Virus record (IMG/VR): IMGVR_UViG_3300037882_001770
Coordinates: 1 to 64,000 of that record
Strand: one strand, 5' to 3'
Length of the DNA: 64,000 bases
The notes beneath the pieces are model-generated. The model had not been told where the DNA came from, made no database searches, and worked only from the letters and a program-made list of their open reading frames with translations. Shown one piece after another: positions 9,128 through 24,300 of the stretch (position 1 is its first letter; the number at the start of each line of letters is the position of its first letter). Made by a program: the position numbers and the translations under genes.

Positions 9128-9416
9128 TGATTTTCTAGAGCAGTGGGAACATATAATTGCTACAGTAAACAAGACAGATGTTCCATTAGAATGCATTAAA
9201 AAAGTAGTAATCAAATTAAAAGGCGGCAAACAAAAAACTATTAACGTAAGTACTCTCCAGCGACAAGGATTAGATCTAGTCGAAATTGAAGGCATGCTTA
9301 CCCGTGTGTTCAATGAAATGGACAGTGAAATACGAGATGTAGATTTTGTAGTAGATATTTCTGCTGTAGCGGCCCTTGTTCAACCAGAAACTGACAAATT
9401 GTTAGGAAAACTTTGA
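9114..9416 (+). CDS. hypothetical protein
   Basis: Coupled ORF, 100 aa. Confidence 0.7.
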   Translation: MQLNDDFLEQWEHIIATVNKTDVPLECIKKVVIKLKGGKQKTINVSTLQRQGLDLVEIEGMLTRVFNEMDSEIRDVDFVVDISAVAALVQPETDKLLGKL

Positions 9417-10113: not shown

Positions 10114-10449
10114 ATGGCCATTGCAAATACACATCGATCAGAAGATGCCACTCGTTTATTTAAAGCACCCGAGTATAAACTCATCAATGATAAAGTAGTA
10201 AAATTTAACGATGTCAAGGTGCACGAATTTAATATGGGAGATGTAGAGGACCCTGACTTGTATGCGGCAGAGCCATTATGGCAGTGGCAACAAACAGAAG
10301 CCGGAAAATGGGTCATGTCTCATGCAGTAGAAACTCCCTTCTGGCATCGCATAGTGAATCCATACACTTTTGGTTATACTTACTACGTGATTGCTCGGCT
10401 TTGCGAGCAGGATCAAACATACTGGACACTTAAATGGCAAAAATCTTAG
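10114..10449 (+). CDS. LRW-family-like protein heading the sugar operon
   Basis: Ends ARLCEQDQTYWTLKW; KWVMSHA helix. Confidence 0.7.
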   Translation: MAIANTHRSEDATRLFKAPEYKLINDKVVKFNDVKVHEFNMGDVEDPDLYAAEPLWQWQQTEAGKWVMSHAVETPFWHRIVNPYTFGYTYYVIARLCEQDQTYWTLKWQKS

Positions 10450-11405
10450 TAACAGGTGGTCTTGGGTTCATCGGGCACAATGTTGTAGCCCTGTTAGAAT
10501 CTCAAGGTCATCACTGTGTCATTACCGATACTCAAACTACCTACGGTATTATCCCACAAGACGAAATAGATTATCTCGTAAGTGAACGAAAAACAAAAAT
10601 AAAAACTGACAGAATCTATCGAATCGACATTGCTGATCGAGATGGTATTGATTGGGTCGTACGCGAACACAAGCCCGATGTTGTCATACACATGGCCAGC
10701 TTTCCTAGACAGAAAGTAGTCAATGCTAATCCTTCCTATGGCGCCCAGGTCATGATGGAGGGGTTGATTAATGTGTTAGAAAGCGCAAAACGTCACAAGG
10801 TAGAACGTGTAGTTTATATTTCAAGTTCAATGGTATATGGTGACTTTGAAGATCAAGTAACTGAGGATAGTGAATGCAATCCTATTGGACAATATGGCAT
10901 TATGAAATTCGCAGGGGAGCAACTTGTTAAAGATTACCATCGCCGCGGCGCTTTTGATTATGTCATTATTCGCCCCAGTGCTGTATATGGGCCACTTGAT
11001 GTCGAAGATAGAGTCGTTGCAAAATTTATGCTGGCAGCCATGCGCGGAGAAACTCTCAAGGTAAACGGCGCAGAAGAAACCCTAGACTTTACCTATGTTG
11101 ACGATGCTGCTGCCGGTATTGTATCCGCCACTACACGTGTCATGAGTGCCAATCGCATATATAATATTACAAAATCATGTTCAGTTGCGCTGTTAACCGC
11201 GGCCGAAATGATTGTTGCCCTTGTGGGCAAAGGAACCGTAGAAGTTCGCGACAGAGACGCAGATTTTCCCAGTCGCGGCGCATTAGATATTGATCGTGCT
11301 AGAGTAATTCTTGGCTACGATCCTAAGATTGATATTGAAGAGGGTTTCCAAAGGTACTATGATTGGCTTAAAAATTCCGTTTACTGGTCTCAAAAAACAG
11401 TATAA
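10434..11405 (+). CDS. NAD-dependent NDP-sugar epimerase/dehydratase (extended SDR)
   Basis: TGGLGFIG, SSSMVYG, YGIMK (YxxxK), RPSAVYGP, DFTYVDD. Confidence 0.93.
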   Translation: MAKILVTGGLGFIGHNVVALLESQGHHCVITDTQTTYGIIPQDEIDYLVSERKTKIKTDRIYRIDIADRDGIDWVVREHKPDVVIHMASFPRQKVVNANPSYGAQVMMEGLINVLESAKRHKVERVVYISSSMVYGDFEDQVTEDSECNPIGQYGIMKFAGEQLVKDYHRRGAFDYVIIRPSAVYGPLDVEDRVVAKFMLAAMRGETLKVNGAEETLDFTYVDDAAAGIVSATTRVMSANRIYNITKSCSVALLTAAEMIVALVGKGTVEVRDRDADFPSRGALDIDRARVILGYDPKIDIEEGFQRYYDWLKNSVYWSQKTV

Positions 11406-12441
11406 CAATCTTCGCACAGAGATATTAGATGCCACGGACGAAGTACTACGTTCAGGACAACTCATGGCAGGTAATCACACTGCTGAGTTTGAAAACTGGC
11501 TGGCCAAGAAAAATAAAAGCAAATATGCTATAACTTGTCATAGCGGCAGCCAGGCGCTTGAAATTATTGCAGAATACTATCGAGGCTTATCTAGTACCAA
11601 TCCACCCACGGTTGCCATACCCAGCATGACCTATGTTGCCACGGCAAACTCATTTTTAAGAGCCGGATGGAACTTGTACATTGCGGATACTGATCAGTAT
11701 GGTATACTGAACAAAAAGAAAATACCACACGATCTAAGTATTCAAGCAACTTGCCTAGTAGGATTGTATGGTATGGCCATCGATCAGCTAGACAATAAAT
11801 TTTGGGCCACAGATTTAATTATTGAAGATGGTGCCCAGCACTGGTTATCCAGCAACTGCAATCGTATTGGCAACGCTACTGCTATCAGCTTTGATCCAAT
11901 GAAAAACTTAAATGCGTATGGCAATGGCGGTGCTGTAGTTACAGATGATGTAGATCTTTTAGAATATGCTCGCGGGTGGAGTAATAACGGCAAGCCCAAA
12001 CATACCAATGTTGGAACCAATAGTCGAATGAGCGAAGTAGAGTGTGCTCAAATGTTGGTCAAAATCAAATATATCGATCTATGGCAGGATCGGCGTAGTA
12101 ACATTGCTCGCTACTGGATCGGTCGATTAAAAGACACCGGTGTCAGATGTTTGATTGACAAAAATAATGTCAACACACATTCATTTCATAAGTTTGTTAT
12201 TGATGTCGATCAACGAGATATATTAAAACGCAATCTCGAACTAAAGCATATTGAAACTAAGGTACATTACAATTTGCCATTGCACGAACTTCCAGTATAC
12301 GAAACATTTTCTGGACCAGATATTTTGAGCTGTGCTAGTAGTCTAAGTCGACGTGTGTTGAGTTTACCAATGTATCCGGAACTAACTGATCTTGAAGTTG
12401 AATATATTATTGATCAGGTGTTAGATTGCGCTTTATCATAG
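11359..12441 (+). CDS. DegT/DnrJ/EryC1/StrS PLP-dependent sugar aminotransferase
   Basis: SGSQAL, EDGAQ, SFDPMKNL (PLP lysine), GTNSRMSE, LSLPMYP. Confidence 0.93.
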   Translation: MIGLKIPFTGLKKQYNNLRTEILDATDEVLRSGQLMAGNHTAEFENWLAKKNKSKYAITCHSGSQALEIIAEYYRGLSSTNPPTVAIPSMTYVATANSFLRAGWNLYIADTDQYGILNKKKIPHDLSIQATCLVGLYGMAIDQLDNKFWATDLIIEDGAQHWLSSNCNRIGNATAISFDPMKNLNAYGNGGAVVTDDVDLLEYARGWSNNGKPKHTNVGTNSRMSEVECAQMLVKIKYIDLWQDRRSNIARYWIGRLKDTGVRCLIDKNNVNTHSFHKFVIDVDQRDILKRNLELKHIETKVHYNLPLHELPVYETFSGPDILSCASSLSRRVLSLPMYPELTDLEVEYIIDQVLDCALS

Positions 12442-14611
12442 CATAAGTGGCCAGCCACTCCCAGTCATAGGATTTTTTAAGTTCTTCAAAGTTTCCGCCA
12501 ACCGATTCATAGTAGTGTACCGCATCCTCTGCGCCCTTGATTGACCATTGCTCGGGTGTGTTATCCTTGTTGAGCCATTGTTTTAATCTGTATTCGTTTT
12601 CAATATTTGGCAAACTGTGTTTCAATTTGATACACTCGCGGAACGCAGTACGCCAACACATCCATGCTGTTGTATGATAGTTGGCCATACCAGATAGTAT
12701 AGGAACTACTTCGTGTGCTTGATCTAGCGTAAAGTCTAATCCTTCGGCAGTATTGGACATGACCAATTCCTTATTATAAGCGATCATGGCTTGATGCCCA
12801 TATACTAACTCGTTTACAGGATTGTATGCGTGGAATATGTAGTGTTTAGATTCTTGTAAGCGATCCGGTTGCCAGTCCCAGTCAAAGTTGGGATTAACTT
12901 CTAACTTGGCAAACACCGCAAAGAACCAAGGTGTAGTACTTAACTCTGCAGCTGCTCGATACGCAGCTACACGCCCGTTAACTCCACTACTGCGATGTAT
13001 ATTGTTTGCAATACTCACATGTGGTAATTGTAGATAATTATACTCGGCATTGGATTCTCCGTTGTCAATAAACACAAGATCCAGTGGCTCGTCTGGCAAC
13101 AAATGACGCTGAGTGCGATCAATGTTAGGATAATCGTACAACTGTTTTTTAATATAAGGAACACTTACTTTAGGAACAATACAAACACTTGCGCCAGAAC
13201 TAAGAGGTACAATAGTTTTAACTTTCTCGCGCCATAACGGAACAGGCGGAACTTCTATGTTCTCAGGCAACTCCTGTGTTGTAAATATTGCCAGTGGCCC
13301 TTTCCAATCAATGGTTTGTACCGCTTCAACGTGAGTATCAAATGCATGTGTAACTGTTGGTAGTTTGCGACGCGGTACACTGGTGCCTACATAATTTATA
13401 TCGTACCAATCTAGTAATTCGCATTTTTCACTGCGGTACAAGAATGTTGGAACATGCATAAAAAATGTATCGCCGAATTTCATTCCGTCACTGGCAAATA
13501 CGTGCAGCATGGTTGCTTGCCATTGTTCTGGATGCCATGTAAAATCAAAATTAGTATAGTCACATACACTACTACATATCCAGACAAATTCGTGTTCTTC
13601 CGGTATGTTTTTTGCCAAGCGGCGCAAGGTATCCAAATAGTTGTCAAAGTATCGAACTGTCTTATTTGCATTAGGAACTTGGCCTGCGTTGCCGTCCATG
13701 TGATCCAATTCGTATATTGCTGTGGCAACTCTTTCTGTGCGTATCTTGATTTGATCCACATACTTTATATCCGTTGCTCCGGGCATGCGATATTGCGGGC
13801 CACCTGTCTTTTGATGCTGAGTAGCAAATTGATAAATGTACGGCGGACTTCCTGGATCCGGACACCAAGAGAAGTCTATGTCTGCAGAATCGACACTGTC
13901 GGGCACGGTCCATAAGGTTTTATCAGCCAGCAGATCAGCTCGAGGGTATCGCATAAACTTACGCTCGGTTGCACCGTCAGCATGATATTCCACAGTGGGC
14001 ATGGTTTCTGCACGATGCCACTGATTGCCAAATACGTAAATGTAAGGAGGGTCTCCTGGATCTGGTCTCCACGAGTAGTTCCACTCACAATCAACTAGTA
14101 TATGCCAGTGATTATCGTGACGTTCTAGCAGTGTTGCTTGAGGCTTGTCTACAAATTTACGTTCAGTTGCGCCCGGTACATGATATTCTATTGTGGGCAT
14201 TTTGTTTGCAGGCCACCACTGATTACCAAACACATAAATGAATGGCGGATCCAGCGGATGTGGATGCCATGTATAGTCAAACTCTATTCCTTCAACCAAC
14301 TGTTTGTAGTTTTCTTGTCGTTCACGATTGGGCAACACTTTGGTATGAAATTTATACTCAAGTTTGCTGGCATGTTTAGGAACCAAGTAAGTGCCTGAGT
14401 ATGCGTGATGCTGACTTGGCCAGGTGTGAGTATATTGACTTTCCCACGGAACCGGCTCCCAAAGAAAATCCCATCCAGTGTAGTCCGATAAGTAACTTAC
14501 CCACCAGAAATATCTTGTTTTACTTAACTGTTGTGCATGTTCAATAGAAGTTGCTTCTTGCTCGTGTGCAAAAAGATTAGGTTTAACTCCGAAATAAAAA
14601 ACGTCAAACAT
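12407..14611 (-). CDS. 734-aa repeat protein with degenerate glycosyltransferase-like modules
   Basis: Three WxPxPxxPPxIYxF...GATxxK repeats; C-terminal domain aligns by eye with 31311-32237. Confidence 0.7.
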   Translation of the reverse strand: MFDVFYFGVKPNLFAHEQEATSIEHAQQLSKTRYFWWVSYLSDYTGWDFLWEPVPWESQYTHTWPSQHHAYSGTYLVPKHASKLEYKFHTKVLPNRERQENYKQLVEGIEFDYTWHPHPLDPPFIYVFGNQWWPANKMPTIEYHVPGATERKFVDKPQATLLERHDNHWHILVDCEWNYSWRPDPGDPPYIYVFGNQWHRAETMPTVEYHADGATERKFMRYPRADLLADKTLWTVPDSVDSADIDFSWCPDPGSPPYIYQFATQHQKTGGPQYRMPGATDIKYVDQIKIRTERVATAIYELDHMDGNAGQVPNANKTVRYFDNYLDTLRRLAKNIPEEHEFVWICSSVCDYTNFDFTWHPEQWQATMLHVFASDGMKFGDTFFMHVPTFLYRSEKCELLDWYDINYVGTSVPRRKLPTVTHAFDTHVEAVQTIDWKGPLAIFTTQELPENIEVPPVPLWREKVKTIVPLSSGASVCIVPKVSVPYIKKQLYDYPNIDRTQRHLLPDEPLDLVFIDNGESNAEYNYLQLPHVSIANNIHRSSGVNGRVAAYRAAAELSTTPWFFAVFAKLEVNPNFDWDWQPDRLQESKHYIFHAYNPVNELVYGHQAMIAYNKELVMSNTAEGLDFTLDQAHEVVPILSGMANYHTTAWMCWRTAFRECIKLKHSLPNIENEYRLKQWLNKDNTPEQWSIKGAEDAVHYYESVGGNFEELKKSYDWEWLATYAMIKRNLTPDQ

Positions 14612-15701
14612 GATTAGAATAGATGAAATTTACAACCATACATTTTGGCCTTGGATAAACCGGCACAAAGCCGGTACGAGAATGCTGTACTGCGATCCAC
14701 CTGGTAGGTCAGATCCTGAAAGTTTATGCGTGTTTGGCAAATCAACTTCCATAGAAACCGACTATGTGTTTTTTCACGATCAAGAACCGATACATATGGA
14801 TTTGCATGAACCTTTATTTAATGATGTTATGATTCGTACTGGAGATTTATCAGACCACACTAGAGGACACATAATTGTTAGCGAACAAGGACAATTTGCC
14901 GACCAACTGACTGAGAAGTACGGGTGGAAACAACACTACTATTTTTATCATGGCTGGGCCTGCCAGGATTGGTTTCGTGGTTACGATAAAGCATTTTTAA
15001 TTCCCAGAGCCGAAGATCGCAAGCCCAATAAAACGTTTATGAGTCCGAATCGTATTATTGCTGGCAAAAGAGATCATCGTGTGTTATTTCTTTATAATGT
15101 ATTCAAAAATAAATTGGAACAAAATCATATCAGTGCTCCAAGAATCTGCACCTACGAAAATGTAGATATATCTAGTATAGCACAAAAATACATCAATGTA
15201 TACCAGGATATAACCGATGTGTTTACGCAGGCCGAACTGCCAAGACTATTTGTAGGCGAAGACCAACAAGAAATGGCATCGTGCTGGCTGACCAACTTTG
15301 CCGAAGCGCAGGATAGTTTAGTGTATGTCCCAACCGAAACTGTTTATTTTGGAAACAGATTACACATCACTGAAAAAACATTCAAGGCTATTGCATTAGA
15401 AATGCCGTTTGTGTTAGTAGCACCAGCTGGCAGCTTAGAGTACATGCGCAGGTATGGATTTCAAACCTTTGGATCAATATTTGATGAGAGCTACGACGAA
15501 GAAACTAACGACATTCGTCGAATTGAAAAAGTTACCAAACTGCTTAAAGATTTAGATAATCTTACTGTGAAAGAGCGGCGAGAGATCCACCATGCATGTC
15601 TAGACACGGTCAAACACAACTATCATCATTTTTACAATGGCGGACTCACTGAAATACTGTGGAATGAATTAATCAACATGATGTACGAGCTTAGAGTTTA
15701 A
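14610..15701 (+). CDS. putative glycosyltransferase ('TEK' family, GT10-like motif)
   Basis: ET...ITEKTFKAI...PFV...GFQTF...DESYD. Confidence 0.6.
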   Translation: MIRIDEIYNHTFWPWINRHKAGTRMLYCDPPGRSDPESLCVFGKSTSIETDYVFFHDQEPIHMDLHEPLFNDVMIRTGDLSDHTRGHIIVSEQGQFADQLTEKYGWKQHYYFYHGWACQDWFRGYDKAFLIPRAEDRKPNKTFMSPNRIIAGKRDHRVLFLYNVFKNKLEQNHISAPRICTYENVDISSIAQKYINVYQDITDVFTQAELPRLFVGEDQQEMASCWLTNFAEAQDSLVYVPTETVYFGNRLHITEKTFKAIALEMPFVLVAPAGSLEYMRRYGFQTFGSIFDESYDEETNDIRRIEKVTKLLKDLDNLTVKERREIHHACLDTVKHNYHHFYNGGLTEILWNELINMMYELRV

Positions 15702-15720
15702 TTTTGTAGCTGATCGTATT

Positions 15721-16869
15721 GTGCGTAACAAAGCCTATCCAGCACTGGCACAGTGGCAGGCCGATCCGTATACCCCCAAATGGAGACAATTTGTTAACCA
15801 TTGGCCCAATACTGTTCCGTGTGAGTTACACGAACACTGTGCTACACACAATTTTCCGTACCAGTTACAAACTACAAAAGATACATATACTCGGCATGAC
15901 TTTTATACAATAGGGTTGGGATTTTTTAATTTTGATGTGGATTATTTTGGTCTATTAGATTTAGATATTCTTCGTGAGTTACAACAGTTAAATCTACGAG
16001 TGTTGTTCTATTATCACGAAGGTGACAATCCTTATCAAATTAAACAACGGTTGGATACCCTGTGCGTTGCTCATCGATTGAGTACAGATTGTTATCGTTT
16101 CGTTAGCGGAAATACCGCTGCTGACCGTATAAAAAACTTTGCTTGGTTTCCAGATCATGAACTGCTGTATTGGCATCGTAATCGATCAATTCCAGCAGAG
16201 CCAGTTAACGTAACTCCTCGGCAATATGATTTTACCTTGCTAAGCCGTACACACAAATGGTGGCGTGCCACTGTGGTCACAGATTTACATCGCACAGGAT
16301 TGTTGGACTGTAGTCAATGGAGCTACAATATCATTGATATAGGTGATTGTGAAGAAGATAATCCTATAGAAGTTGACAGCTTTGATAATTTACGTAACGA
16401 CATGCACTCATTTTTAACGCATGCTCCATATAGTTGTGATAGTTTGTCTTCGGATCAGCACAATGATCACCATCTGACAGAAAGTTCACACTACACAAAT
16501 AGCTACTTTAATATAGTGTTAGAAACACACTTTGATGCTGATGGGTCTGGTGGCGCATTCTTGACCGAAAAGACTTTTAAACCAATCAAGCATGCTCAAC
16601 CATTTGTTGTAATAGGTGCTCCGGGCAGTTTGTCTGCGCTGAGAGATTTAGGTTACCGCACATTTGATCATGTTATAGACACCGGCTACGATACTATACA
16701 AAACAATACCCAACGCTGGCAAGCTGTTAAATCTACCATTGAGCAAATTAAACAAAATCCTGCAGAATATTTTGCTCAATGCCTTGATGACGTACAACAT
16801 AACCAGCAATTATTTTTATCCAGCAAATACAACCGATTAAATAGATTACTTGAAAGATTACAAACATGA
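15721..16869 (+). CDS. putative glycosyltransferase ('TEK' family)
   Basis: FNIVLET...LTEKTFKPI...PFV...GYRTF...DTGYD; true start may lie upstream. Confidence 0.6.
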   Translation: MRNKAYPALAQWQADPYTPKWRQFVNHWPNTVPCELHEHCATHNFPYQLQTTKDTYTRHDFYTIGLGFFNFDVDYFGLLDLDILRELQQLNLRVLFYYHEGDNPYQIKQRLDTLCVAHRLSTDCYRFVSGNTAADRIKNFAWFPDHELLYWHRNRSIPAEPVNVTPRQYDFTLLSRTHKWWRATVVTDLHRTGLLDCSQWSYNIIDIGDCEEDNPIEVDSFDNLRNDMHSFLTHAPYSCDSLSSDQHNDHHLTESSHYTNSYFNIVLETHFDADGSGGAFLTEKTFKPIKHAQPFVVIGAPGSLSALRDLGYRTFDHVIDTGYDTIQNNTQRWQAVKSTIEQIKQNPAEYFAQCLDDVQHNQQLFLSSKYNRLNRLLERLQT

Positions 16870-17885
16870 TTAACAGTTATACCTCGTGGCAACCATTAGA
16901 AGAAGTTATTGTAGGCCGTGCTTACAGCCCTGATTATTTTGATTTTATTGATAACCCACAAGTACGCAATCAGCTACAGCAAATTCTGTCAGAGACCGAA
17001 GAAGATCTAAACAATCTTCAAAAAACCATCGAAACCTATGGTGCACGAGTTCGTCGTCCACATCTTCCCAGCAAAGACAGCTTTGTCTGGCATCAGACTG
17101 AAGGTGGTGGAGCTCCGTTGCCTCCGTTAACTCCCAGAGATTGGCAAATCAGTTTGGGAGACAAACTATTGCGTGTGTTGGCCATGCCCGAGCTGGACGA
17201 AATTTGTGCAGACTTTGCAGATCAAGTTGTCAATCCACACAAGAGTGCATGGGATCAGGATTGTATTTTAAATCAAGCCAGCGCCAGTTGTATTGTGCGT
17301 GTGGGCACAGATGTATTTTTTGACAACAGCGATTTTTTACGTCCAGAGCAAACACAATGGATTGTGGATAATTGCCTGGATAGTCGTTATCGCATTCACG
17401 AAGCAGTAACAGACGGCCACGGAGATGCGGTATTTGCTATTCTCAAACCCGGAGTTATTTTAAGCAGCAAGCACGATGTCAATTTGGATCTTGCCAAGGA
17501 CTTTCCAGGATGGGAAGTTCTTAAGATCTGGGATAGTAGTATTTGGGCAGCTATGGAAGTGGGCAAGTTCAAGTATGAAGAAAGTCCAGGTGCTTGGTAT
17601 GTACAAGGACAAACACCCACAGCCGAGTTCTCACAGTTTGTAGACACTTACTTGAACAAGTGGACTGGCTTTGTGGCCGAAACTGTGTTTGATGTCAACT
17701 GTTTGGTACTGGATGAAGAAAATGTCATTTTCTCAGCCTACAACAAAGATGTTTTTGATTTTTGTAAAAAGCACAAAATCAATCCTATTATTTCAGAATT
17801 GCGACACAGCTACTTCTGGGATGGCGGTATCAGTTGTTGTACACAAGACTTGACACGACGTGGCGGTTTAGAAACTTATCTCTAA
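16866..17885 (+). CDS. amidinotransferase (glycine/inosamine-phosphate amidinotransferase family)
   Basis: INSYTSWQPLEEVIVGR, PRD, HGD, FDVN, GGISCCTQDL with catalytic Cys position. Confidence 0.88.
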   Translation: MINSYTSWQPLEEVIVGRAYSPDYFDFIDNPQVRNQLQQILSETEEDLNNLQKTIETYGARVRRPHLPSKDSFVWHQTEGGGAPLPPLTPRDWQISLGDKLLRVLAMPELDEICADFADQVVNPHKSAWDQDCILNQASASCIVRVGTDVFFDNSDFLRPEQTQWIVDNCLDSRYRIHEAVTDGHGDAVFAILKPGVILSSKHDVNLDLAKDFPGWEVLKIWDSSIWAAMEVGKFKYEESPGAWYVQGQTPTAEFSQFVDTYLNKWTGFVAETVFDVNCLVLDEENVIFSAYNKDVFDFCKKHKINPIISELRHSYFWDGGISCCTQDLTRRGGLETYL

Positions 17886-17894
17886 TACTGTAAA

Positions 17895-19067
17895 TTATTT
17901 TGTAAACTCTGGCCACAATGCGTCAAACGACAGGCCAGGTGGCGGCATTGTTTGTTCTTGCCGAGCGTGCCATTGTGCCAGCTGTGCCACAGAAGTAATG
18001 TTAATCGCTGGCAGTGCCAATTGAGCACGATATCGTTTTAATATATCCAGACTTAATCGATATGTGTTAGCCGGATCGCTTTCGTATTTTGCCAACACAA
18101 GATCAATTTCTTCTTGCGCACGAGTTTTTAGTACGTTGGGCAATTTGCGAACATCCAGCACCGGCGGATCTATCAAATCGCACCAGTATATTTCAATATT
18201 ATAAAGTCGACAGAACTCAAAATAATCAACTAGATCAAATGCACAGTAGATAGAATAAGCAGGATGTGCTACTATGTGTTGTTGATCGTCTTTCATTAGT
18301 TGTAGATTACGTTTGAATATTTCCCAACTTGCACCACGTCTGACGTACTCGAACTTGGCTGGATCTGCATTGTCAAAACTAATTTGCCAGGCCACACTGG
18401 GCCATTTACGTAGTTCTTGATAGATGGCATTTTTAGTCAGATCTATACTTAAATTAGTAGTAACAACTACCTTGGCCTGAGTAGAATCAATCTCTTTGAG
18501 AAATTCCAATAATCCTGGCTGCAACAACGGCTCGCCACCGCCGAGAGTTAATCCTATTAGGCTATCACGATTGTCCTTGGCCAGTTGTATTAAATCATCT
18601 GATTTGTTACGCACATGGGTAATTGGAATTTTTTTTATGTGTTGCCATGCAGTACTAGTTTCTGGATTACAGTAGGTACAAGTTAAATTACATAAATTAG
18701 TCCAACATACCGTAAGATTAATTAGTTTAAAAAAGTTGATGTCTAGATCAATTTGATCCATTAGGTTAGCTGGTATGCGCCGAGTCAGTCTGGCACTATT
18801 CCCGCCCGTTGATTCGTTGTGTTGGCAGCTTTGGCAAAAGCTGTGCCATTCGCCTTGTGCTATAGTTTCTTTAAGTTCTTTTAATGTTGGGCCATTGATA
18901 ATAGATTGTATGCTTTGTTGTTTGATTGATCCTAGCGAGTTTTGTTTGTTATTCAGATAGTTCCAACCATAGCTATGTAGGCACGGCAATACTTGTCCTG
19001 TTTGATCTATATTCAACGTAGTCCACGGCTCTGGACAAAATGTTGGGCTCTTTGTTATTTTAGACAT
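17895..19067 (-). CDS. radical SAM protein with N-terminal twitch/SPASM-like domain
   Basis: FCPEPW..PC..CQSC; CNLTCTYC; GGEP. Confidence 0.9.
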   Translation of the reverse strand: MSKITKSPTFCPEPWTTLNIDQTGQVLPCLHSYGWNYLNNKQNSLGSIKQQSIQSIINGPTLKELKETIAQGEWHSFCQSCQHNESTGGNSARLTRRIPANLMDQIDLDINFFKLINLTVCWTNLCNLTCTYCNPETSTAWQHIKKIPITHVRNKSDDLIQLAKDNRDSLIGLTLGGGEPLLQPGLLEFLKEIDSTQAKVVVTTNLSIDLTKNAIYQELRKWPSVAWQISFDNADPAKFEYVRRGASWEIFKRNLQLMKDDQQHIVAHPAYSIYCAFDLVDYFEFCRLYNIEIYWCDLIDPPVLDVRKLPNVLKTRAQEEIDLVLAKYESDPANTYRLSLDILKRYRAQLALPAINITSVAQLAQWHARQEQTMPPPGLSFDALWPEFTK

Positions 19068-19764
19068 TGTTTCCTGATAGATAATCGTGTATTTTTTTTG
19101 CTACGTATTTGTGCCCGTCAACTGACATGTGGCCTCCGGGACAGACTGGAATGTGCTCGGTCCATGTTAACATGTGTTCGTGTGGGAACCCAGGATAATT
19201 TTTGACTTGAATTAAATTTTCAAATTTATTTAAACGGGCAAATACCCCGGGGTAAAACCAAGTTTCGCAACTGTTGATAAACAGATATTTTTGACCTATT
19301 GTTCTAAAATGATTTTGCAGAGCAATTACCTGTGCAAACTGTTTATCAAATTGATGGTTATCATCGTAATGATGCTTAATATAATCATTTAACCACGGCA
19401 TGCGTTTTAATAACACCAGGCTGTTGACCGTAAACGGTAAATCCTTGCCCTGGTAAAATAAGTCAAATCGAGGCATTGCGGTCCATGCACATATTACTAA
19501 ACTATATTGTTGATCTACAGTTTCTGTCATGGCCATGCGAAAGATTCGATCATTGCTGCCGCCTATCAGACTGAGATTAACAACCGGCGTGTTTTGAAGT
19601 TTTCCAAGCAGCTCTGGCCAAGCCAATTGGCTAGGAGCAAGCGGCAGTATTTGTGCGACTCGATTATCAAAATATTCATTTCCTAACTCAGTGGTCACCG
19701 TAGCAGGTACGTCGGGCAATTCTAACCCAAATGAATTGCTGTCACCTATTACTAATATAGTCAT
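19060..19764 (-). CDS. SGNH/GDSL-like protein
   Basis: GDSNSFG, GGSNDRI, terminal GGH...GH. Confidence 0.7.
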   Translation of the reverse strand: MTILVIGDSNSFGLELPDVPATVTTELGNEYFDNRVAQILPLAPSQLAWPELLGKLQNTPVVNLSLIGGSNDRIFRMAMTETVDQQYSLVICAWTAMPRFDLFYQGKDLPFTVNSLVLLKRMPWLNDYIKHHYDDNHQFDKQFAQVIALQNHFRTIGQKYLFINSCETWFYPGVFARLNKFENLIQVKNYPGFPHEHMLTWTEHIPVCPGGHMSVDGHKYVAKKIHDYLSGNNV

Positions 19765-20324
19765 GCACGGTTGTACCTAAGATATACGCTATTGCGTTGC
19801 ATGCCAGGAGGAACTGGTGTTGCTAATCCATGCAATACCTGTCCTGGCTTTTCAAAAAAATATCCAAAGTTATTTCGATAAGGGAGTTGTAATAGTATTT
19901 TGTCTGGGGTTTGATATATTGTAGTGCCCAATATTGGACCATTCCATTTTGCAGATTCTCGAGACATGTATATTTGTACTGCGTAATCAAAAAAATCAGG
20001 ATCCTGGTGTGGACTGATAGTGTATCCTTCAAAGTCGGCCCAAAGACTTATTCCTGCAGGGATGACCGGCCTCCCCAACATGCCGTTAATTTCTTTTAAT
20101 ATTTCAGAGCTAGCAGCGTAAGATACTATTTGATCGACAATCTTGCTTTTTCCTCGATACAAACGTCGACCTGCGCGATGACTAAAAACTTCAGTATCGG
20201 GCCAATCTGTGTCATCTATATTGTCAAATATAGAGAGTACTTGTTCTGCTAATTCTGCGGTAAAAAAATTATCTAGTAGATAAATGTTGGACTGTCCTAG
20301 ATAATTGATTACTGTATTCTTCAT
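19761..20324 (-). CDS. 2OG-Fe(II) oxygenase
   Basis: HQD...H...RxS arrangement (PHQD, VLHG, RNS). Confidence 0.75.
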   Translation of the reverse strand: MKNTVINYLGQSNIYLLDNFFTAELAEQVLSIFDNIDDTDWPDTEVFSHRAGRRLYRGKSKIVDQIVSYAASSEILKEINGMLGRPVIPAGISLWADFEGYTISPHQDPDFFDYAVQIYMSRESAKWNGPILGTTIYQTPDKILLQLPYRNNFGYFFEKPGQVLHGLATPVPPGMQRNSVYLRYNRA

Positions 20325-21829
20325 TAGCTACAAACCTTTACACCATATTCTTTCTCAAAACGATCTGCATCTGCGCGGTCATTAACCATGGGCTCTCCAC
20401 GTATGTTAAGACTAGTGTTTAAAAGCATAGGACATCCTGTTTCTTTGTACCACGCTTCGAGTAATCTTCTAATGCCTGAGCCATTATCTGCAACCGTTTG
20501 AATTCGGCTAGTACCATCCACATGACAGATAGCAGGAAATAAATCAGGACGGCGACAATGGGCGACAATTTGCATATAACTGCTATCACTCCAGCCCCGG
20601 GGCATAATAAAAAATTCATCCACATGCTCTGCCAGGATAACCGGTGCAAACGGTCTAAACTTTTGTCTACGCTTGATTTCATTTACTCGATCCTTTATAT
20701 CCACTCCTCGGGGGTCGGCAAGGAGACTTCTATTTCCCAGTGCTCTGGGTCCAAACTCGGCTCGACCACTAGCGACACCGACGATTCTATCACGGAGTAA
20801 ACAATCAACAAGGGCATGGACAGGATATTCTCCTGAGATGTTATGGCCAAGGTACGCATCTCGCCAGTTAACTCGTTTTCCGTAGGCCAGTGCGGCAGCA
20901 CCAAGACTGCTACCAGCGTCGCCAGGGCAAGGCATGATCCAAATGTTTTCAAAGTATTCACCGAGTTTTCTATTAGCAAGACAATTCAACGCCACGCCGC
21001 CCATGTACACTAGATTCGAACTCCAGTTAAACTCCTGAGCACGTTGCATAACACTATATATCAATTCTTCTGCCACCGATTGTGCAGCTCCGGCAATATC
21101 TTCATTGGATACGCCATACATAAATTCTTTTTCTACACCCAAGTGTAGATTTTCTTTAAATTTAAGTTCTTGTACATCGTCTACCAAATGATGTTTCATT
21201 GGGTGGGCATACACATTGCCATGAGTACTGTATGCACTCATGCCCATGGTAATATATTCTTCATCCATTGGATGCAGGCCAATTCGTTGAGTCATTGCAC
21301 TATAAAAAAGTCCAATAGAGTGTGGATATCGTTGTCTCCATAGTCGTTTGTAGATTGCGTGACCCGATCCAGTGTATTCTGCGCCCCAAATGCTAATAGT
21401 ATCAAACTCACCAATTGCATCAATTACTACCACAGTGGCACGTTCATATGGACTGGTTTGAAATCCGGCAGCTGCATGACTCAAATGGTGCGGATAACAT
21501 ACTTCATGTTCGGCCGAATTTGGATACCATGCACCAAGATGTTGAGTCAATGCGCCACGCACAGTCCACGGACCAAATTTATTTTGTCTGGTATATAGCT
21601 GTTGTAAATTGTGCATCCATGGGCGCTCATACCAGGCCACAGTATCAAACTGCCACGGGCATAGTTGTGAAACAAACTCGTCACAAAAATTACTATCATT
21701 TTTAATTTTACTGTAGCGTTCACTGTGTCCAGCAAACTCTATGTCGCCGTGACTGTTAATAACCGTGGCTGCGGCATCGTGATATCCTGCACTTAATCCT
21801 AGGGTGTACTTGACTGGCGCTCGTTTCAT
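20324..21829 (-). CDS. carbamoyltransferase (NodU/CmcH family)
   Basis: HDAAA, HHLSHAA, GGVALNC, GDAG, EFGPRALGNRS, FRPFAP, LLNTSLN. Confidence 0.95.
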   Translation of the reverse strand: MKRAPVKYTLGLSAGYHDAAATVINSHGDIEFAGHSERYSKIKNDSNFCDEFVSQLCPWQFDTVAWYERPWMHNLQQLYTRQNKFGPWTVRGALTQHLGAWYPNSAEHEVCYPHHLSHAAAGFQTSPYERATVVVIDAIGEFDTISIWGAEYTGSGHAIYKRLWRQRYPHSIGLFYSAMTQRIGLHPMDEEYITMGMSAYSTHGNVYAHPMKHHLVDDVQELKFKENLHLGVEKEFMYGVSNEDIAGAAQSVAEELIYSVMQRAQEFNWSSNLVYMGGVALNCLANRKLGEYFENIWIMPCPGDAGSSLGAAALAYGKRVNWRDAYLGHNISGEYPVHALVDCLLRDRIVGVASGRAEFGPRALGNRSLLADPRGVDIKDRVNEIKRRQKFRPFAPVILAEHVDEFFIMPRGWSDSSYMQIVAHCRRPDLFPAICHVDGTSRIQTVADNGSGIRRLLEAWYKETGCPMLLNTSLNIRGEPMVNDRADADRFEKEYGVKVCS

Positions 21830-21927: not shown

Positions 21928-23012
21928 TTTACATTCCTTAATTGAAAATCATAACCTGGGCGCAACTGATTAATCTGTTGGGACTTGTAATCACTGTCAG
22001 ACCAGCAGTAGTCAAACGTTTGCGAAATTCCGTCAACTTCAACACAATATATATCTAGGTAGTTGCCTAGTATCTTCCAAATGTCCTCACCGTTTTCTGT
22101 GCCAAAACTTTGTTTTAATTCAACCTGTGCAATGGGCAAGTAACCCAAGCTAAGTGATGGATCTGTTCTATCTTGATTGTTTGCGTCTAACCAAGCATGA
22201 AATGCCAATTGCTCTTTGGTATGCCACGGATTATCTCCAGCCATGGTAACATCATTGCCCCATTCAACATCAAATTCGCCACTGTAAAATCTAAGGCTAG
22301 TAATGGCCTCGCATACTGTTTCGGTTAACTCGGGTGCGCCCTCATCACGAAACACTTCAAATAAAGTTTTGCCTATCTGTGTCCAGTGCATATATACTCC
22401 GCCTAGCACACGATCGTACCCGTTGATAGCAAAGCCATCGCGGTGTGCTGGTTTCAAATCGTATCTGTCGGCCGTTAGCCATGTGGTAATTTGGCTCGGT
22501 CGTACCCAATATGGTGAGGTTGCAGCCTTGCGTTGTCCTAAAATAAGATTTTCCATTTCGTGGCAAATATTGTTAAGTTGACGAATAGCATATTTGGTCG
22601 AATAATCTGCTTTTTGATACCACGGGCTAAGATTCCACACTGTGCCCTGTAATACCTCAAAGTGGTTGTGCAATATGTTCATAATTTCATGATTGACTCC
22701 GTTGTCAGCATAGTCAAATCCCACTACACTTTCTGGGGTGAATATCTGTTCGATTTGATAACCAGGAAAAAATGAATTAATCTGATCCACTGCTTGATTG
22801 AGTTCATTGCACAAATATGGCAAATCTCTAGCGGTGTTAGGAAATCCCATAAAGCAAAAATTCTTTTCTAACATCTTGCCACTTTGCAATAGCTTCTTAA
22901 GTGCTACAATCCAGTCGTGCGCCAATTCGTGATCCTGCGCAGTAATTACATAATCGATTTGATCTTGTTTTTTTAATGGGTTTCGTAATACGATTTTAAC
23001 AGTCGATGTCAT
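21924..23012 (-). CDS. hypothetical protein, 362 aa
   Basis: Long coupled ORF; no motif recognised. Confidence 0.8.
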   Translation of the reverse strand: MTSTVKIVLRNPLKKQDQIDYVITAQDHELAHDWIVALKKLLQSGKMLEKNFCFMGFPNTARDLPYLCNELNQAVDQINSFFPGYQIEQIFTPESVVGFDYADNGVNHEIMNILHNHFEVLQGTVWNLSPWYQKADYSTKYAIRQLNNICHEMENLILGQRKAATSPYWVRPSQITTWLTADRYDLKPAHRDGFAINGYDRVLGGVYMHWTQIGKTLFEVFRDEGAPELTETVCEAITSLRFYSGEFDVEWGNDVTMAGDNPWHTKEQLAFHAWLDANNQDRTDPSLSLGYLPIAQVELKQSFGTENGEDIWKILGNYLDIYCVEVDGISQTFDYCWSDSDYKSQQINQLRPGYDFQLRNVK

Positions 23013-24300
23013 TCCACCACCTTAAAATATCTGCACGTTGTGATAATATATTTTGCATATTTGTTTTTGCTGTTCTTATACTTTCTAGTCGTAATATTCT
23101 GGCCTTGCCCTTGGCAAGTCCGGCTTGATATTGATCCGGCCACTGTTCTTCAAAAGTTGGGCGATTTTTTAATTGTATCAGTACATTTTGCATTGCGCCA
23201 CCGGTGTTAGGCACTAATTCGTCAATCCAAGATTCAAGCAGTGGACGCGGTAACGCCAAGGGACTCATAACTATGTCTGGGGTAAACGAAAATATCACTT
23301 TGGCCAATAGTTCTACACCCAGTTGATTGGCTAGCTGGGTCATTGCAGAAACTTCAAACATGCCTGGCAATGTAAGCGTAAAGTCTAGTCGCATTTGCCT
23401 GCGATTTTTGGATATAGTTAATCCTTGTTTAAAGTTTTCTAGAAAAACGGGCCACGATAAGCCTGTTCTGATATATTCTCCGATGTCTCCGGTTCCGTCA
23501 ACGGAGGCACATATTTGCCAATCACGTAAATTTTCCAACACGCCACTATAAAGATTAATGCCGTTGTAATCCACACGACTGAGATTGGTATTGTATCTTG
23601 CATAGACATTTGGTCCGTCTCCTAATTCAATAATGCGTTTCATGTAACGCCAGTGTTGCTCGTACATAAGTGGTTCGCCGCCGACCCAATATATTTCTTC
23701 TACTCTGTGTTCTTCTACTGCCTCGGCGAACTCTGCTTCAATTTGTTGATCTTGAAATTGACTAATTTGTTTTCTAACGTCAGAGCGCATCCACAAATTT
23801 TTTGTGTTACTCCAGTCCACCATATCGTGTTGTTTTTGTTCTGTTTCCCAACTGCTTGACAACATATCGCCGCAGGTTCTACATTTAAAATTGCACAGAT
23901 TACTGAATCTATAATCCCAACTTACAGGTTTCATAGTAGTATATCCTGTTTCGTCAGTCTCGTTCCATAACTTTTCATACTTGTGATTAAACAAATGACT
24001 AAAATATGTTCGATATACATCAGTGTTTAACAATTTGTCATTGCAGACTTCGCATTCGGGCAGTGTTTCGCCGGCCATCATACGGCGACGTACACTACGC
24101 ATGTGGTCACTGTTCCAGTGTTGCTCTAGAGTTATTGGGGTGTACTTTCCAGTGCCTGTGCTGGTGTCAATGTATTGTTCAAAACTCTGTGCAGGTTCAC
24201 GACTTGCACAGCACAACCTACGCTCTGTTTGTGGGCTCAGATAAGTGTGTGTCCATGGCGCCATGCACAACGTATCGGGCCGTTTATCCGGGGAATTCAT
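22996..24300 (-). CDS. radical SAM protein with N-terminal twitch-like domain
   Basis: LCMAPW..LCC..CEVC; CNFKCRTC; GGEP. Confidence 0.9.
   Translation of the reverse strand: MNSPDKRPDTLCMAPWTHTYLSPQTERRLCCASREPAQSFEQYIDTSTGTGKYTPITLEQHWNSDHMRSVRRRMMAGETLPECEVCNDKLLNTDVYRTYFSHLFNHKYEKLWNETDETGYTTMKPVSWDYRFSNLCNFKCRTCGDMLSSSWETEQKQHDMVDWSNTKNLWMRSDVRKQISQFQDQQIEAEFAEAVEEHRVEEIYWVGGEPLMYEQHWRYMKRIIELGDGPNVYARYNTNLSRVDYNGINLYSGVLENLRDWQICASVDGTGDIGEYIRTGLSWPVFLENFKQGLTISKNRRQMRLDFTLTLPGMFEVSAMTQLANQLGVELLAKVIFSFTPDIVMSPLALPRPLLESWIDELVPNTGGAMQNVLIQLKNRPTFEEQWPDQYQAGLAKGKARILRLESIRTAKTNMQNILSQRADILRWWNDIDC

What the first reader, a model, noticed from the sequence alone, without database searches (positions are those of the whole stretch)
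10434..17885. Epimerase/dehydratase, DegT aminotransferase and amidinotransferase: a possible guanidino-sugar pathway in a phage
Seen: intact catalytic motifs in all three, with two TEK-family GT-like genes directly upstream of the amidinotransferase. Established: streptidine biosynthesis pairs a DegT-family aminotransferase with an inosamine-phosphate amidinotransferase (StrB1). Inference: keto-sugar to amino-sugar to guanidino-sugar, yielding a cationic glycan, which would be unusual for a virus.
Basis: partly seen in the sequence, partly recalled or inferred. Interest (0 to 1): 0.65.

Follow-up and report, generated by a model that had tools for sequence, protein, structure and literature searches.

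The report
Phage amidinotransferase inside a sugar-tailoring island
A 317-kb T4-like jumbo phage carries an arginine-type amidinotransferase among sugar-nucleotide enzymes, glycosyltransferase-like genes, radical SAM enzymes and a carbamoyltransferase; similar pairings recur in other large phages, so it probably adds a guanidino group to a phage-made sugar, but no product has been shown.

Summary
The genes are real and at the stated coordinates: an SDR (10434-11405), a DegT aminotransferase (11359-12441), two paralogous GT-B-fold "TEK" proteins (14610-16869) and an amidinotransferase (16866-17885).

The amidinotransferase hits no Pfam family. Its sequence profile and AlphaFold model match StrB1, AGAT, SxtG and HsvA. 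It keeps Cys324, His185, Asp187 and Asp92, but has Ser139 where AGAT has Asp254.

- The SDR is epimerase-type and lacks the Asp-Glu of 4,6-dehydratases, so the source of the keto-sugar is open.
- The DegT is closest to C-3 aminotransferases.

The block is part of a roughly 20-kb island with six or seven twitch/SPASM radical SAM paralogs, a NodU-type carbamoyltransferase and a third GT paralog.

The family is large and mostly viral. Most distant members have no sugar genes nearby. Even so, an SDR-amidinotransferase-miniDegT operon recurs in related phages. Cyanophage S-SCSM2R and Campylobacter phage CP220 place the canonical StrB1-like type beside GTs and radical SAM genes. The host genome also has a second, canonical StrB1-like amidinotransferase outside the window.

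Verdict: a glycan-linked amidinotransferase is the best reading (about 0.4). The acceptor is unproven.

The parts
10434..11405 (+). Extended SDR, NDP-sugar epimerase type (323 aa)
   Evidence: Pfam Epimerase 1.6e-46. Best PDB match is B. cereus UDP-GlcA 4-epimerase 6zl6, 1.6e-29. 'SSSMVYGD' aligns with the dehydratase motif 'STDEVYGD'. TIGR01181 scores 133 bits against a cut-off of 365.
11359..12441 (+). DegT/DnrJ/EryC1/StrS PLP aminotransferase (ORF opens at 11311; likely start ATG 11359)
   Evidence: PF01041 1.4e-54. PDB: 7b0d 5.9e-43, QdtB 2.6e-39, DesV 3.3e-38, WbpE, NtdA. PLP Lys and Asp are conserved. Start candidates.
12407..14611 (-). 734-aa protein of unknown function with three N-terminal ~66-aa repeats (W.P.P..PP[FY]IY.FGNQW)
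   Evidence: No Pfam, PHROG or NCBIfam hit. Repeats at residues 115, 181 and 249. The atlas gives only a weak GT2 lead, 0.85. Conserved in 69 of 80 close loci.
14610..15701 (+). GT-B-fold 'TEK' glycosyltransferase-like protein 1 (P0122, 363 aa)
   Evidence: AF2 model pLDDT 78.6. VIA wide search: all top 50 rows are GT-B enzymes, with T4 beta-glucosyltransferase Z 10.8, alpha-glucosyltransferase 10.3 and H. pylori FucT 9.7. Foldseek is weak, best 1.2e-3. E255-K256 are invariant in the family.
15721..16869 (+). GT-B-like 'TEK' paralog 2 (P0123, 382 aa)
   Evidence: Same BLAST cluster as P0122. Aligned in A4 at 18% identity with the TEK motif conserved.
16866..17885 (+). Amidinotransferase, phage-specific subfamily 'type A' (P0001, 339 aa)
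   Evidence: It is the most conserved gene of the island: 85.5% median identity against 50-70% for its neighbours.
17895..19067 (-). Radical SAM protein with N-terminal twitch/SPASM domain
   Evidence: NCBIfam N_Twi_rSAM 3.6e-56, 191 bits against a cut-off of 170. Pfam Radical_SAM plus SPASM.
19060..19764 (-). DUF6071 protein
   Evidence: PF19547 1e-07.
20324..21829 (-). NodU/Nol-type carbamoyltransferase
   Evidence: phrog_1601 2.2e-91. NodU model 7.5e-37, below its cut-off. Present in 74 of 80 close loci.
22996..28196 (-). Four tandem radical SAM/SPASM paralogs (22996-24300, 24284-25501, 25498-26868, 26865-28196)
   Evidence: Pfam Radical_SAM and SPASM. PHROG radical SAM families. One BLAST cluster with 17895-19067 and 29318-30739.
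28189..29343 (-). Third paralog of the GT-B-like 'TEK' family (384 aa)
   Evidence: Clusters with P0122 and P0123. Aligned in A4.
29318..30739 (-). Divergent radical SAM-like protein (473 aa)
   Evidence: phrog_14086 1.4e-9. Pfam Radical_SAM 0.0014. Same BLAST cluster as the other rSAM genes.

Best explanation
P0001 is an active L-arginine-dependent amidinotransferase of a phage-specific branch of the AGAT/StrB1 family. It works inside a phage-encoded sugar-tailoring pathway.

Proposed sequence:
1. A host NDP-sugar, or a host keto-sugar intermediate, is epimerised or oxidised. The SDR does this, or possibly one of the radical SAM enzymes.
2. The DegT enzyme transaminates it, most likely at C-3.
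3. The amidinotransferase converts the resulting amine to a guanidino group through an S-amidino-Cys324 intermediate, releasing ornithine.
4. The GT-B-like proteins transfer the sugar onto an acceptor. No polyprenol-phosphate initiating transferase was found in the record, which fits direct glycosylation of a protein rather than host envelope polysaccharide.
5. The carbamoyltransferase and radical SAM paralogs tailor it further.

Shown: enzyme family, fold, conserved residues, gene linkage and its recurrence. Inferred: arginine as donor, an amino-sugar as acceptor, the order of steps and the final target.
For: Family and active site:
- Searches place the protein in the amidinotransferase family.
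- Catalytic residues are invariant in 121 relatives, and this is the best-conserved gene of the island.

Linkage within its clade:
- 64/64 untruncated loci keep SDR and DegT upstream, and the GT-like genes directly upstream remain detectable in all but a few.

Independent linkages:
- The order GT1-like, SDR, AmT, miniDegT, FolE occurs in L124, L160, L164 and L167; L146 shows the AmT-miniDegT-FolE part. That AmT is about 30% identical to P0001.
- G000 has the same block at 284465-288256 without the AmT. So two different AmT lineages each sit beside an SDR/DegT pair.
- The GT-like family lies within 10 kb of AmT in 16/89 distant loci, against 2/79 control loci (p = 0.001). For the SDR the counts are 8/89 against 0/79.
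- Sugar-linked contexts occupy several deep branches of the AmT tree.

Cultured phages:
- S-SCSM2R ORF309 is flanked by GTs, a mini-DegT and a radical SAM gene. ORF266, the P0001-like copy, lies next to KdsA/KdsB and GTs.
- CP220 gp086 lies among five radical SAM genes and two GT-A genes.
Against: - No acceptor can be read from homology. Solved relatives use glycine, inosamine phosphate, a saxitoxin intermediate or polyamines.
- 63 of 77 distant AmT-bearing records show no DegT-family gene, though most of these contigs are fragments.
- The commonest neighbours elsewhere are three small ORFs of unknown function.
- The SDR lacks dehydratase residues.
- No NTP-transferase, GFO/IDH/MocA dehydrogenase or clear ketoisomerase was found, so the keto-sugar step is unexplained.
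- Ser139 replaces the third residue of the canonical triad.
- Loci within one clade are not independent observations.
- No guanidino-sugar glycan is known to me. That rests on my own knowledge, not on a search.
Confidence: 0.4

Rival explanations
1. Stand-alone auxiliary metabolic enzyme. It moves the amidino group of arginine onto an abundant small host amine (glycine, lysine, putrescine or spermidine). This would make ornithine plus a guanidino compound, for example for polyamine or DNA-counterion supply or for nitrogen handling. Its place in the sugar island would be incidental.
For: - Most distant homologs have no sugar gene within 10 kb, and the gene appears in many different positions beside core T4-like genes such as DNA polymerase, UvsW and baseplate genes.
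- HsvA, a polyamine amidinotransferase, is the best profile match.
- The family is very widespread in viral contigs: more than 600 stretches, and 690 representative clusters.
- SpeD lies a few kb from ORF309 in S-SCSM2R.
Against: - SDR, GT-like and UDP-sugar dehydrogenase genes are enriched near the gene relative to control loci.
- The gene overlaps and appears translationally coupled with the SDR and mini-DegT genes in L124, L160, L164 and L167.
- Its position is fixed within the island in more than 130 contigs.
Confidence: 0.25
2. The acceptor is a macromolecule rather than a free sugar: lysine or hydroxylysine side chains of virion proteins, or an amine on an already attached glycan. The enzyme would then be a late protein that modifies the virion.
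For: - The S-SCSM2R homolog ORF266 (30.6% identity) was detected in the CsCl-purified virion proteome, together with the neighbouring 2OG oxygenase ORF269 (PMC12801897; context).
- The island lies next to the tail and baseplate module, which includes a 4927-aa ORF and a gp5-like hub protein.
- No polyprenol-phosphate initiating transferases were found.
Against: - No solved family member in the PDB hits acts on a protein, and I know of none that does (my own knowledge).
- The paper's authors themselves regard ORF266 as probably non-structural carry-over.
- Nothing in the window tests this.
Confidence: 0.1
3. The enzyme is a hydrolase of the guanidino-modifying superfamily, such as an arginine deiminase or dihydrolase, not a transferase.
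For: - The third triad residue (AGAT Asp254) is Ser139 and is not conserved in the subfamily.
- Deiminases and DDAH share the fold.
- Pfam's amidinotransferase model does not recognise the protein.
Against: - Sequence and structure are far closer to the transferases than to the hydrolases: profile E about 1e-38 and Foldseek about 1e-20, against Foldseek about 1e-9.
- Both guanidinium-binding Asp residues and the HxD motif follow the AGAT pattern.
Confidence: 0.1
4. The island decorates phage DNA. The GT-B proteins would be DNA glycosyltransferases, and the amino or guanidino sugar would end up on a modified base.
For: - The two best structural matches of the GT-like model are the T4 DNA beta- and alpha-glucosyltransferases, Z 10.8 and 10.3.
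- ThyX lies just upstream.
- FolE follows the AmT/mini-DegT operon in relatives.
- Virus GTs that hypermodify DNA with glycans are known (Pyle et al. 2024, as cited in PMC12619734).
Against: - No ThyA-type hydroxymethylase was found in the record, which is 89% complete.
- The Z scores are tied within 1 with many non-DNA GT-B enzymes.
- A carbamoyltransferase and six radical SAM enzymes have no precedent in DNA glycosylation that I know of (my own knowledge).
Confidence: 0.07
5. The genes build a diffusible aminocyclitol or aminoglycoside-like metabolite, as the S-SCSM2R authors suggest with 'antibiotic synthesis genes', rather than a glycan.
For: - The best PDB match of the DegT is deposited as a glutamine-scyllo-inositol transaminase.
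- The genome has a second, canonical StrB1-like amidinotransferase.
- From my own knowledge: twitch-domain radical SAM enzymes (BtrN) and NodU/TobZ-type carbamoyltransferases occur in aminoglycoside pathways.
Against: - No cyclitol-forming enzyme was looked for or seen.
- Three GT-B paralogs, the position next to tail genes, and the KdsA/KdsB context in the cyanophage point to glycoconjugates.
- Depositor names are not functional evidence.
Confidence: 0.08

Closest known systems
StrB1, L-arginine:inosamine-phosphate amidinotransferase (PDB 1bwd), with AGAT (1jdw), SxtG (6u1r) and HsvA (5wpi)
   Same: Same fold and family: profile E 7e-34 to 7e-39, Foldseek about 1e-20. The Cys nucleophile, the His-x-Asp motif and the PRD Asp all align.
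   Different: - Only 18-21% identical (Foldseek alignments).
- About 40-50 residues shorter.
- Ser139 in place of Asp254/Asp179.
- 'GGISCC' instead of 'GGGFHC'.
- Own conserved residues: E272, N278, R313, FWD317-319.
- Not recognised by any Pfam model.
- Acceptor unknown.
Radical SAM plus putative glycine amidinotransferase module of Campylobacter phages CP220/CPt10 (Timms et al. 2010, PMC2853527)
   Same: A T4-like phage with a cluster of five radical SAM genes, one amidinotransferase and glycosyltransferases. It was described as an interchangeable module of unknown function.
   Different: - CP220 gp086 is nearer to the canonical paralog of G000 (par2, E 1e-16) than to P0001 (8e-8).
- In the one CP220 radical SAM protein with an annotated Cys-rich stretch (gp080), that stretch is C-terminal; here the twitch domain is N-terminal.
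- No SDR, DegT or carbamoyltransferase is annotated in the 13-kb CP220 stretch that was read.
Synechococcus phage S-SCSM2R ORF266 and ORF305-310 (PMC12801897)
   Same: - It carries both amidinotransferase types. ORF266 is 30.6% identical to P0001. ORF309 is 35% identical to par2.
- It has a mini-DegT (ORF305, 38.5% to G000's) and a radical SAM gene.
- It has several GTs and a 2OG-oxygenase-like gene upstream of ORF309, as in G000.
   Different: - A 244-kb marine cyanophage.
- ORF266 sits beside KdsA/KdsB and 2OG oxygenases, not beside a full-length DegT.
- Its authors read the genes as antibiotic synthesis genes.
- ORF266 was found in the virion proteome.
Virus-encoded amino-sugar pathways, such as the Mimivirus UDP-viosamine pathway (4,6-dehydratase plus DegT-type aminotransferase). 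Recalled from my own knowledge, not tested here.
   Same: A large virus pairs an SDR with a DegT-family aminotransferase and its own glycosyltransferases to decorate virion structures.
   Different: Here the SDR is epimerase-type, not a 4,6-dehydratase. The island also adds an amidinotransferase, a carbamoyltransferase and many radical SAM enzymes.

Membership tests
AGAT/StrB1 amidinotransferases (guanidino-modifying 'pentein' superfamily) | Pentein alpha/beta propeller fold, closest to the transferase branch | tested here: met
   AF2 model pLDDT 90.5. Foldseek: StrB1 2.2e-20, SxtG, AGAT and HsvA about 1e-20-1e-19; deiminases and DDAH about 1e-9.
AGAT/StrB1 amidinotransferases (guanidino-modifying 'pentein' superfamily) | Catalytic Cys nucleophile (AGAT C407 / StrB1 C332) | tested here: met
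   Cys324 aligns with it. Invariant in 121 close relatives and in 99% of distant ones.
AGAT/StrB1 amidinotransferases (guanidino-modifying 'pentein' superfamily) | His-x-Asp (AGAT H303/D305) and the second guanidinium-binding Asp (AGAT D170 / StrB1 D108) | tested here: met
   His185, Asp187 and the Asp92 of 'PRD' align. D187 is invariant; H185 and D92 are at least 95% conserved.
AGAT/StrB1 amidinotransferases (guanidino-modifying 'pentein' superfamily) | Third triad residue Asp (AGAT D254 / StrB1 D179) | tested here: not met
   The aligned position is Ser139, and it varies (N/S/D) across the subfamily. The genome's second paralog does have it, in 'ILDAAN'.
AGAT/StrB1 amidinotransferases (guanidino-modifying 'pentein' superfamily) | Recognition by a curated family model (Pfam, NCBIfam) | tested here: not met
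   No amidinotransferase family was listed even at E <= 10, and NCBIfam gave none. Only a PHROG of unknown function matched.
AGAT/StrB1 amidinotransferases (guanidino-modifying 'pentein' superfamily) | Arginine as donor, ornithine released, amine acceptor | not testable with these tools
   Needs an enzyme assay.
DegT/DnrJ/EryC1/StrS sugar aminotransferases | Family model above cut-off, with the PLP-binding Lys and the pyridine-N Asp | tested here: met
   PF01041 scores 186 bits against a cut-off of 19.8. Lys in 'FDPMKNL' and Asp in 'IEDGAQ' align with QdtB and 7b0d. No NCBIfam equivalog reaches its cut-off.
NDP-sugar 4,6-dehydratases (RmlB type) | Asp-Glu dyad in 'STDEVYG', and the equivalog score | tested here: not met
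   'SSSMVYGD' aligns with 'STDEVYGD' of 2hun. TIGR01181 scores 133 bits against a cut-off of 365.
GT-B glycosyltransferases, GT10-like 'TEK' group | Two-Rossmann GT-B fold | tested here: met
   All top 50 VIA matches are GT-B enzymes, Z 7.3-10.8. All but one of the listed Foldseek rows are GT-B enzymes too, but weak: best E 1.2e-3, TM about 0.35.
GT-B glycosyltransferases, GT10-like 'TEK' group | Membership of GT10 (PF00852) or another named GT family | tested here: inconclusive
   - No Pfam hit at E <= 10.
- No PDB hit with a family profile.
- The atlas feature search gives GT10 only as a 0.80 lead.
- H. pylori FucT scores Z 9.7, tied with many other families.
- The nearest atlas structures are unnamed viral clusters.
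Streptidine-type pathway (cyclitol, DegT-type transaminase, kinase, StrB1) | A cyclitol-forming enzyme, an inosamine kinase and an acceptor phosphate | not tested
   No search was made for inositol-phosphate synthase or a kinase. Only the DegT and amidinotransferase components were seen.
Phage 'radical SAM + amidinotransferase' module (CP220/CPt10) | Several radical SAM genes clustered with one amidinotransferase in a T4-like phage | tested here: met
   Six to seven radical SAM-type genes between 17895 and 30739 lie next to the AmT. The genome has a T4-type gp23, 9e-99. For comparison.

The most novel reading that the evidence does not exclude
Large T4-like phages make a cationic, guanidinylated sugar that is further carbamoylated and tailored by radical SAM enzymes. 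It would be either a new type of glycan on virion or host surface structures, or an aminoglycoside-like product. Two dedicated amidinotransferase lineages would carry this out, and one of them (P0001-type) is largely confined to viruses.
Probability: 0.3. Interest if true: 0.8.

Novelty: new variant of a known kind. Interest (0 to 1): 0.6.

Why it matters
- Amidinotransferases are known from creatine, streptomycin, toxin and polyamine chemistry. None has been shown to act on a glycan, and none from a virus has been characterised.
- This family is abundant: hundreds of viral contigs and 690 representative clusters.
- It is strongly conserved and is already present in cultured phages (S-SCSM2R, CP220), so the question can be tested directly.
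- If the acceptor is an amino-sugar, it would define a new sugar modification. It would also give a function to the unexplained 'radical SAM + amidinotransferase' modules noted in phage genomes since 2010.
- If the acceptor is a small amine, it would be a new auxiliary metabolic function touching arginine, ornithine and polyamine pools.

Tried and rejected
- Pfam and NCBIfam scans of the amidinotransferase, the two GT-like proteins and the 734-aa protein gave nothing usable.
- Single-sequence and profile searches of the GT-like family and of small ORF c1 against PDB sequences found nothing.
- Foldseek on the GT-like model was only weak. The VIA search was needed.
- Look-ups of three distant homologs returned contigs too short for context.
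- Alignment A1 was too diverse for a locus scan, so A2 and A3 were used.
- My first BLAST-based count of DegT near distant homologs, 0 of 89, was a false negative for a compact DegT form. An HMM search corrected it.
- The three small ORFs c1-c2-c3 looked like obligatory partners. However, the trio occurs without the AmT in 66 of 79 c1-anchored loci, and in G000 it lies 53 kb away. I therefore do not claim a functional link.
- The 'moraphage' lineage paper (PMC12619734) does not mention these genes. Those phages have smaller genomes, so they are probably a different group.
- The DNA-glycosylation idea lacks a hydroxymethylase.
- Not used: reads tools, complex prediction, and any genetic code other than table 11.

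Full report
**What the window is.** The window is the first 64 kb of a 317,493-bp IMG/VR virus record, estimated 89% complete. The genome encodes a T4-type major capsid protein (Pfam Gp23, 9e-99, at 79.5 kb). The window itself holds a gp5-like baseplate hub and a 4927-aa ORF. It is therefore a T4-like jumbo myovirus. Complete relatives of 337-364 kb with terminal repeats exist. Table 11 was used throughout, and no reads tool was used.

**The observation.**
- The SDR is at 10434-11405 and the DegT ORF at 11311-12441. Two paralogous genes lie at 14610-15701 and 15721-16869, and the amidinotransferase at 16866-17885.
- The SDR scores Pfam Epimerase 1.6e-46 and has the Gly-rich, Ser and YxxxK motifs.
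- The DegT scores PF01041 1.4e-54 and keeps its PLP Lys and Asp. Its likely start is ATG 11359.
- The amidinotransferase (P0001) hits no Pfam or NCBIfam model.
- It does match StrB1 and AGAT by phmmer at about 2e-12.
- A profile of 128 family members matches HsvA, AGAT, SxtG and StrB1 at 7e-39 to 7e-34.
- An AlphaFold model (pLDDT 90.5) has those four as its top Foldseek hits at about 1e-20. Deiminases and DDAH come far behind, at about 1e-9.
- Cys324, His185, Asp187 and Asp92 align with the AGAT/StrB1 nucleophile, base and guanidinium-binding residues. They are invariant in 121 close relatives.
- The exception is the third triad residue. AGAT Asp254 / StrB1 Asp179 aligns with Ser139, a position that varies across the subfamily.

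**Corrections to the proposed pathway.**
- The SDR is epimerase-type. Its best solved relative is the B. cereus UDP-glucuronate 4-epimerase (1.6e-29).
- Where true 4,6-dehydratases have 'STDEVYGD', it has 'SSSMVYGD'. The dehydratase equivalog model is far below its cut-off.
- The closest solved relatives of the DegT are C-3 aminotransferases: QdtB, DesV, WlaRG-type, WbpE and NtdA. There is also an entry deposited as a glutamine-scyllo-inositol transaminase.
- The genome record has no sugar nucleotidyltransferase and no GFO/IDH/MocA 3-dehydrogenase. It has only a sub-threshold FdtA-like cupin at 294.8 kb.
- How a keto-sugar arises is therefore unexplained. It could come from the host, or from one of the radical SAM enzymes. 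That last idea is an inference.

**The GT-like genes.**
- P0122, P0123 and a third paralog at 28189-29343 form one family with an invariant T-E-K motif.
- Neither sequence nor profile searches find a named family.
- A model of P0122 (pLDDT 78.6) gives weak Foldseek hits, nearly all of them GT-B enzymes.
- In the VIA search, all 50 top rows are GT-B glycosyltransferases. T4 beta-glucosyltransferase scores Z 10.8, alpha-glucosyltransferase 10.3 and H. pylori alpha-1,3-fucosyltransferase 9.7.
- The GT-B fold is supported. Assignment to GT10 is not decided. The nearest atlas structures are unnamed viral clusters.

**The wider island.** Downstream on the minus strand lie:
- a radical SAM protein with an N-terminal twitch domain (NF033640, above its cut-off);
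- a DUF6071 protein;
- a NodU/Nol-type carbamoyltransferase;
- four more radical SAM/SPASM paralogs;
- the third GT-like paralog;
- a divergent radical SAM-like gene.

A 734-aa protein with three N-terminal repeats lies between the DegT and the GT-like genes on the opposite strand. The finding is one end of a roughly 20-kb sugar-tailoring island that abuts the tail module.

**Close relatives.**
- 138 IMG/VR stretches encode a relative; the 80 loci kept are 80-94% identical.
- Every one of the 64 loci that extends far enough keeps SDR and DegT upstream, and 734(-), GT-GT, AmT and carbamoyltransferase in the same order in nearly all.
- The amidinotransferase is the best-conserved gene: 85.5% median identity, against 50-70% for its neighbours.
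- This is one lineage, so it amounts to a single observation of linkage.

**Distant relatives.**
- The exhaustive search finds 690 representative clusters, 146 of them below 1e-30 and mostly 28-44% identical.
- Bacterial and archaeal genomes gave only 11 loci, all in MAGs. One of them is a 148-kb contig syntenic with the window, binned as Haliscomenobacter.
- In 89 distant loci the commonest neighbours are three small ORFs: c1 (weak DUF6875), c2, and c3 (DUF6614).
- That trio occurs without the amidinotransferase in 66 of 79 c1-anchored loci. In G000 it lies at 70.1-71.3 kb. I do not treat it as a partner.
- Using those c1-anchored loci as a control, the GT-like family is enriched near the amidinotransferase: 16/89 against 2/79, Fisher p = 0.001.
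- The SDR is also enriched (8/89 against 0/79, p = 0.007), as is a UDP-sugar dehydrogenase (6/89 against 0/79).
- Sugar-linked contexts occupy several deep branches of a quick maximum-likelihood tree.

**The DegT test.**
- A BLAST count gave 0 of 89, but it missed a compact form.
- A Pfam scan, followed by PF01041 searches of 77 records, found 14 records with a DegT-family gene.
- At least seven of those 14 carry a 'mini-DegT' of about 200-250 aa, which keeps the PLP Lys and Asp.
- In L124, L146, L160, L164 and L167 it starts immediately after, or within about 20 bases of, the end of the amidinotransferase gene.
- In four of these, an epimerase-type SDR ('SSAAVYG') overlaps its start. The order is GT1-like, SDR, AmT, miniDegT, FolE.
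- G000 has the same block at 284465-288256, 69-89% identical, but with no amidinotransferase between the SDR and the mini-DegT.
- So two different amidinotransferase lineages each sit beside a different SDR/DegT pair in related phages.

**A second amidinotransferase.**
- G000 encodes a canonical StrB1-like paralog at 190073-190996, outside the window. It has all five canonical residues: 'CPRD', 'LDAAN', 'HIDST' and 'GGGFHC'.
- It sits in a cassette of a UDP-sugar-dehydrogenase-like gene, a 172-aa gene, the amidinotransferase and a 425-aa gene.
- The same cassette defines the deepest clade of the tree.
- All five complete relatives carry both types.

**Cultured phages and literature.**
- Cyanophage S-SCSM2R carries both types. 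ORF266 (30.6% to P0001) lies next to KdsA/KdsB, GTs and 2OG oxygenases.
- ORF309 (35% to the canonical paralog) is flanked by several GTs, a mini-DegT annotated as AHBA synthase, a radical SAM gene and a 2OG-oxygenase-like gene. That last gene is homologous to the 172-aa gene of G000.
- Its authors detected ORF266 in the virion proteome. They call ORF305, 306 and 309 'antibiotic synthesis genes' (PMC12801897).
- Campylobacter phage CP220 has an amidinotransferase among five radical SAM genes and two GT-A genes.
- Timms et al. described this in 2010 as an interchangeable module of unknown function (PMC2853527).
- Full-text searches found no functional study of a phage amidinotransferase.

**Judgement.**
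- That P0001 is a functional amidinotransferase-type enzyme is well supported.
- That it works with sugar-nucleotide enzymes is supported by repeated, partly independent gene linkage. It is not shown.
- The acceptor, the position of the amine, the order of steps and the final target are all inferred.
- The absence of polyprenol-phosphate initiating transferases, the nearby tail genes and the virion-proteome report lean towards decoration of virion or other proteins, but weakly.
- Rivals remain open: a small-amine acceptor, a protein acceptor, hydrolysis, DNA glycosylation, or an aminocyclitol-like metabolite.
- I rate it a new variant of a known kind. The enzyme family and the phage module were already noticed, but this subfamily, its island and its recurrent SDR/DegT linkage have not been described or explained.

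Noticed in passing
G000:C1:190073-190996 (outside the window; L260:8073-8996): A second, canonical StrB1-like amidinotransferase with all five canonical residues. It sits in a cassette of a UDP-sugar-dehydrogenase-like gene (415 aa), a 172-aa 2OG-oxygenase-like gene, the amidinotransferase and a 425-aa unknown gene. It is present in all five complete relatives and is homologous to S-SCSM2R ORF308-309 and CP220 gp086.
   Followed up: partly
G000:C1:284465-297406 (outside the window; L261): A second sugar block: GT1-like, SDR2, mini-DegT and FolE, then an FdtA-like cupin (sub-threshold), a UDP-sugar-dehydrogenase-like gene and SDR3. In related contigs (L124, L160, L164, L167) an amidinotransferase is inserted between SDR2 and the mini-DegT.
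   Followed up: partly
L146, L160, L164, L167; G000:C1:286758-287348; S-SCSM2R ORF305: A compact 'mini-DegT' family of about 200-250 aa that keeps the PLP Lys and Asp but lacks most of the C-terminal domain. It is annotated as AHBA synthase in the cyanophage. BLAST with a full-length DegT misses it.
   Followed up: partly
G000:C1:70066-71335 (minus strand; L180): A tight trio of small ORFs: c1 (166 aa, weak DUF6875, 'WAPCPYAR' motif), c2 (144 aa, weak ATE_C-like) and c3 (111 aa, DUF6614, up to 92% identical between phages). It is very common in uncultured T4-like phages and often interleaved with the amidinotransferase gene, but nearly absent from cultured phages.
   Followed up: partly
window 17895-19067 and 22996-30739 (minus strand): Six to seven tandem paralogs of a radical SAM family whose twitch/SPASM domain is N-terminal (NF033640). 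Their substrates are unknown.
   Followed up: no
window 37747-52530 (minus strand): A single 4927-aa ORF rich in Thr, Val, Gly, Ser and Asn, with no collagen-like repeats and no internal repeats by BLAST. It is followed by a 1143-aa ORF and a gp5-like hub, so it is presumably a giant tail or baseplate protein.
   Followed up: partly
window 12407-14611 (minus strand): A 734-aa protein with three ~66-aa repeats carrying 'W.P.P..PP[FY]IY.FGNQW'. It is duplicated or triplicated in some relatives, and the atlas gives only a weak GT2 lead.
   Followed up: no
L089 (NZ_JBBAKG010000003.1, 148 kb): A contig binned in a Haliscomenobacter MAG has the same gene order as the window and an 81%-identical amidinotransferase. 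It is either a mis-binned phage contig or a hint at a Bacteroidota host.
   Followed up: no
L153, L165, L173, L176, L107, L134, L139, L155: Two or three amidinotransferase paralogs on one contig, sometimes in tandem or flanking a GT-like gene.
   Followed up: no
window 9413-10090: ThyX (flavin-dependent thymidylate synthase) lies just upstream of the island, in conserved synteny. No ThyA-type enzyme was found in the record.
   Followed up: no
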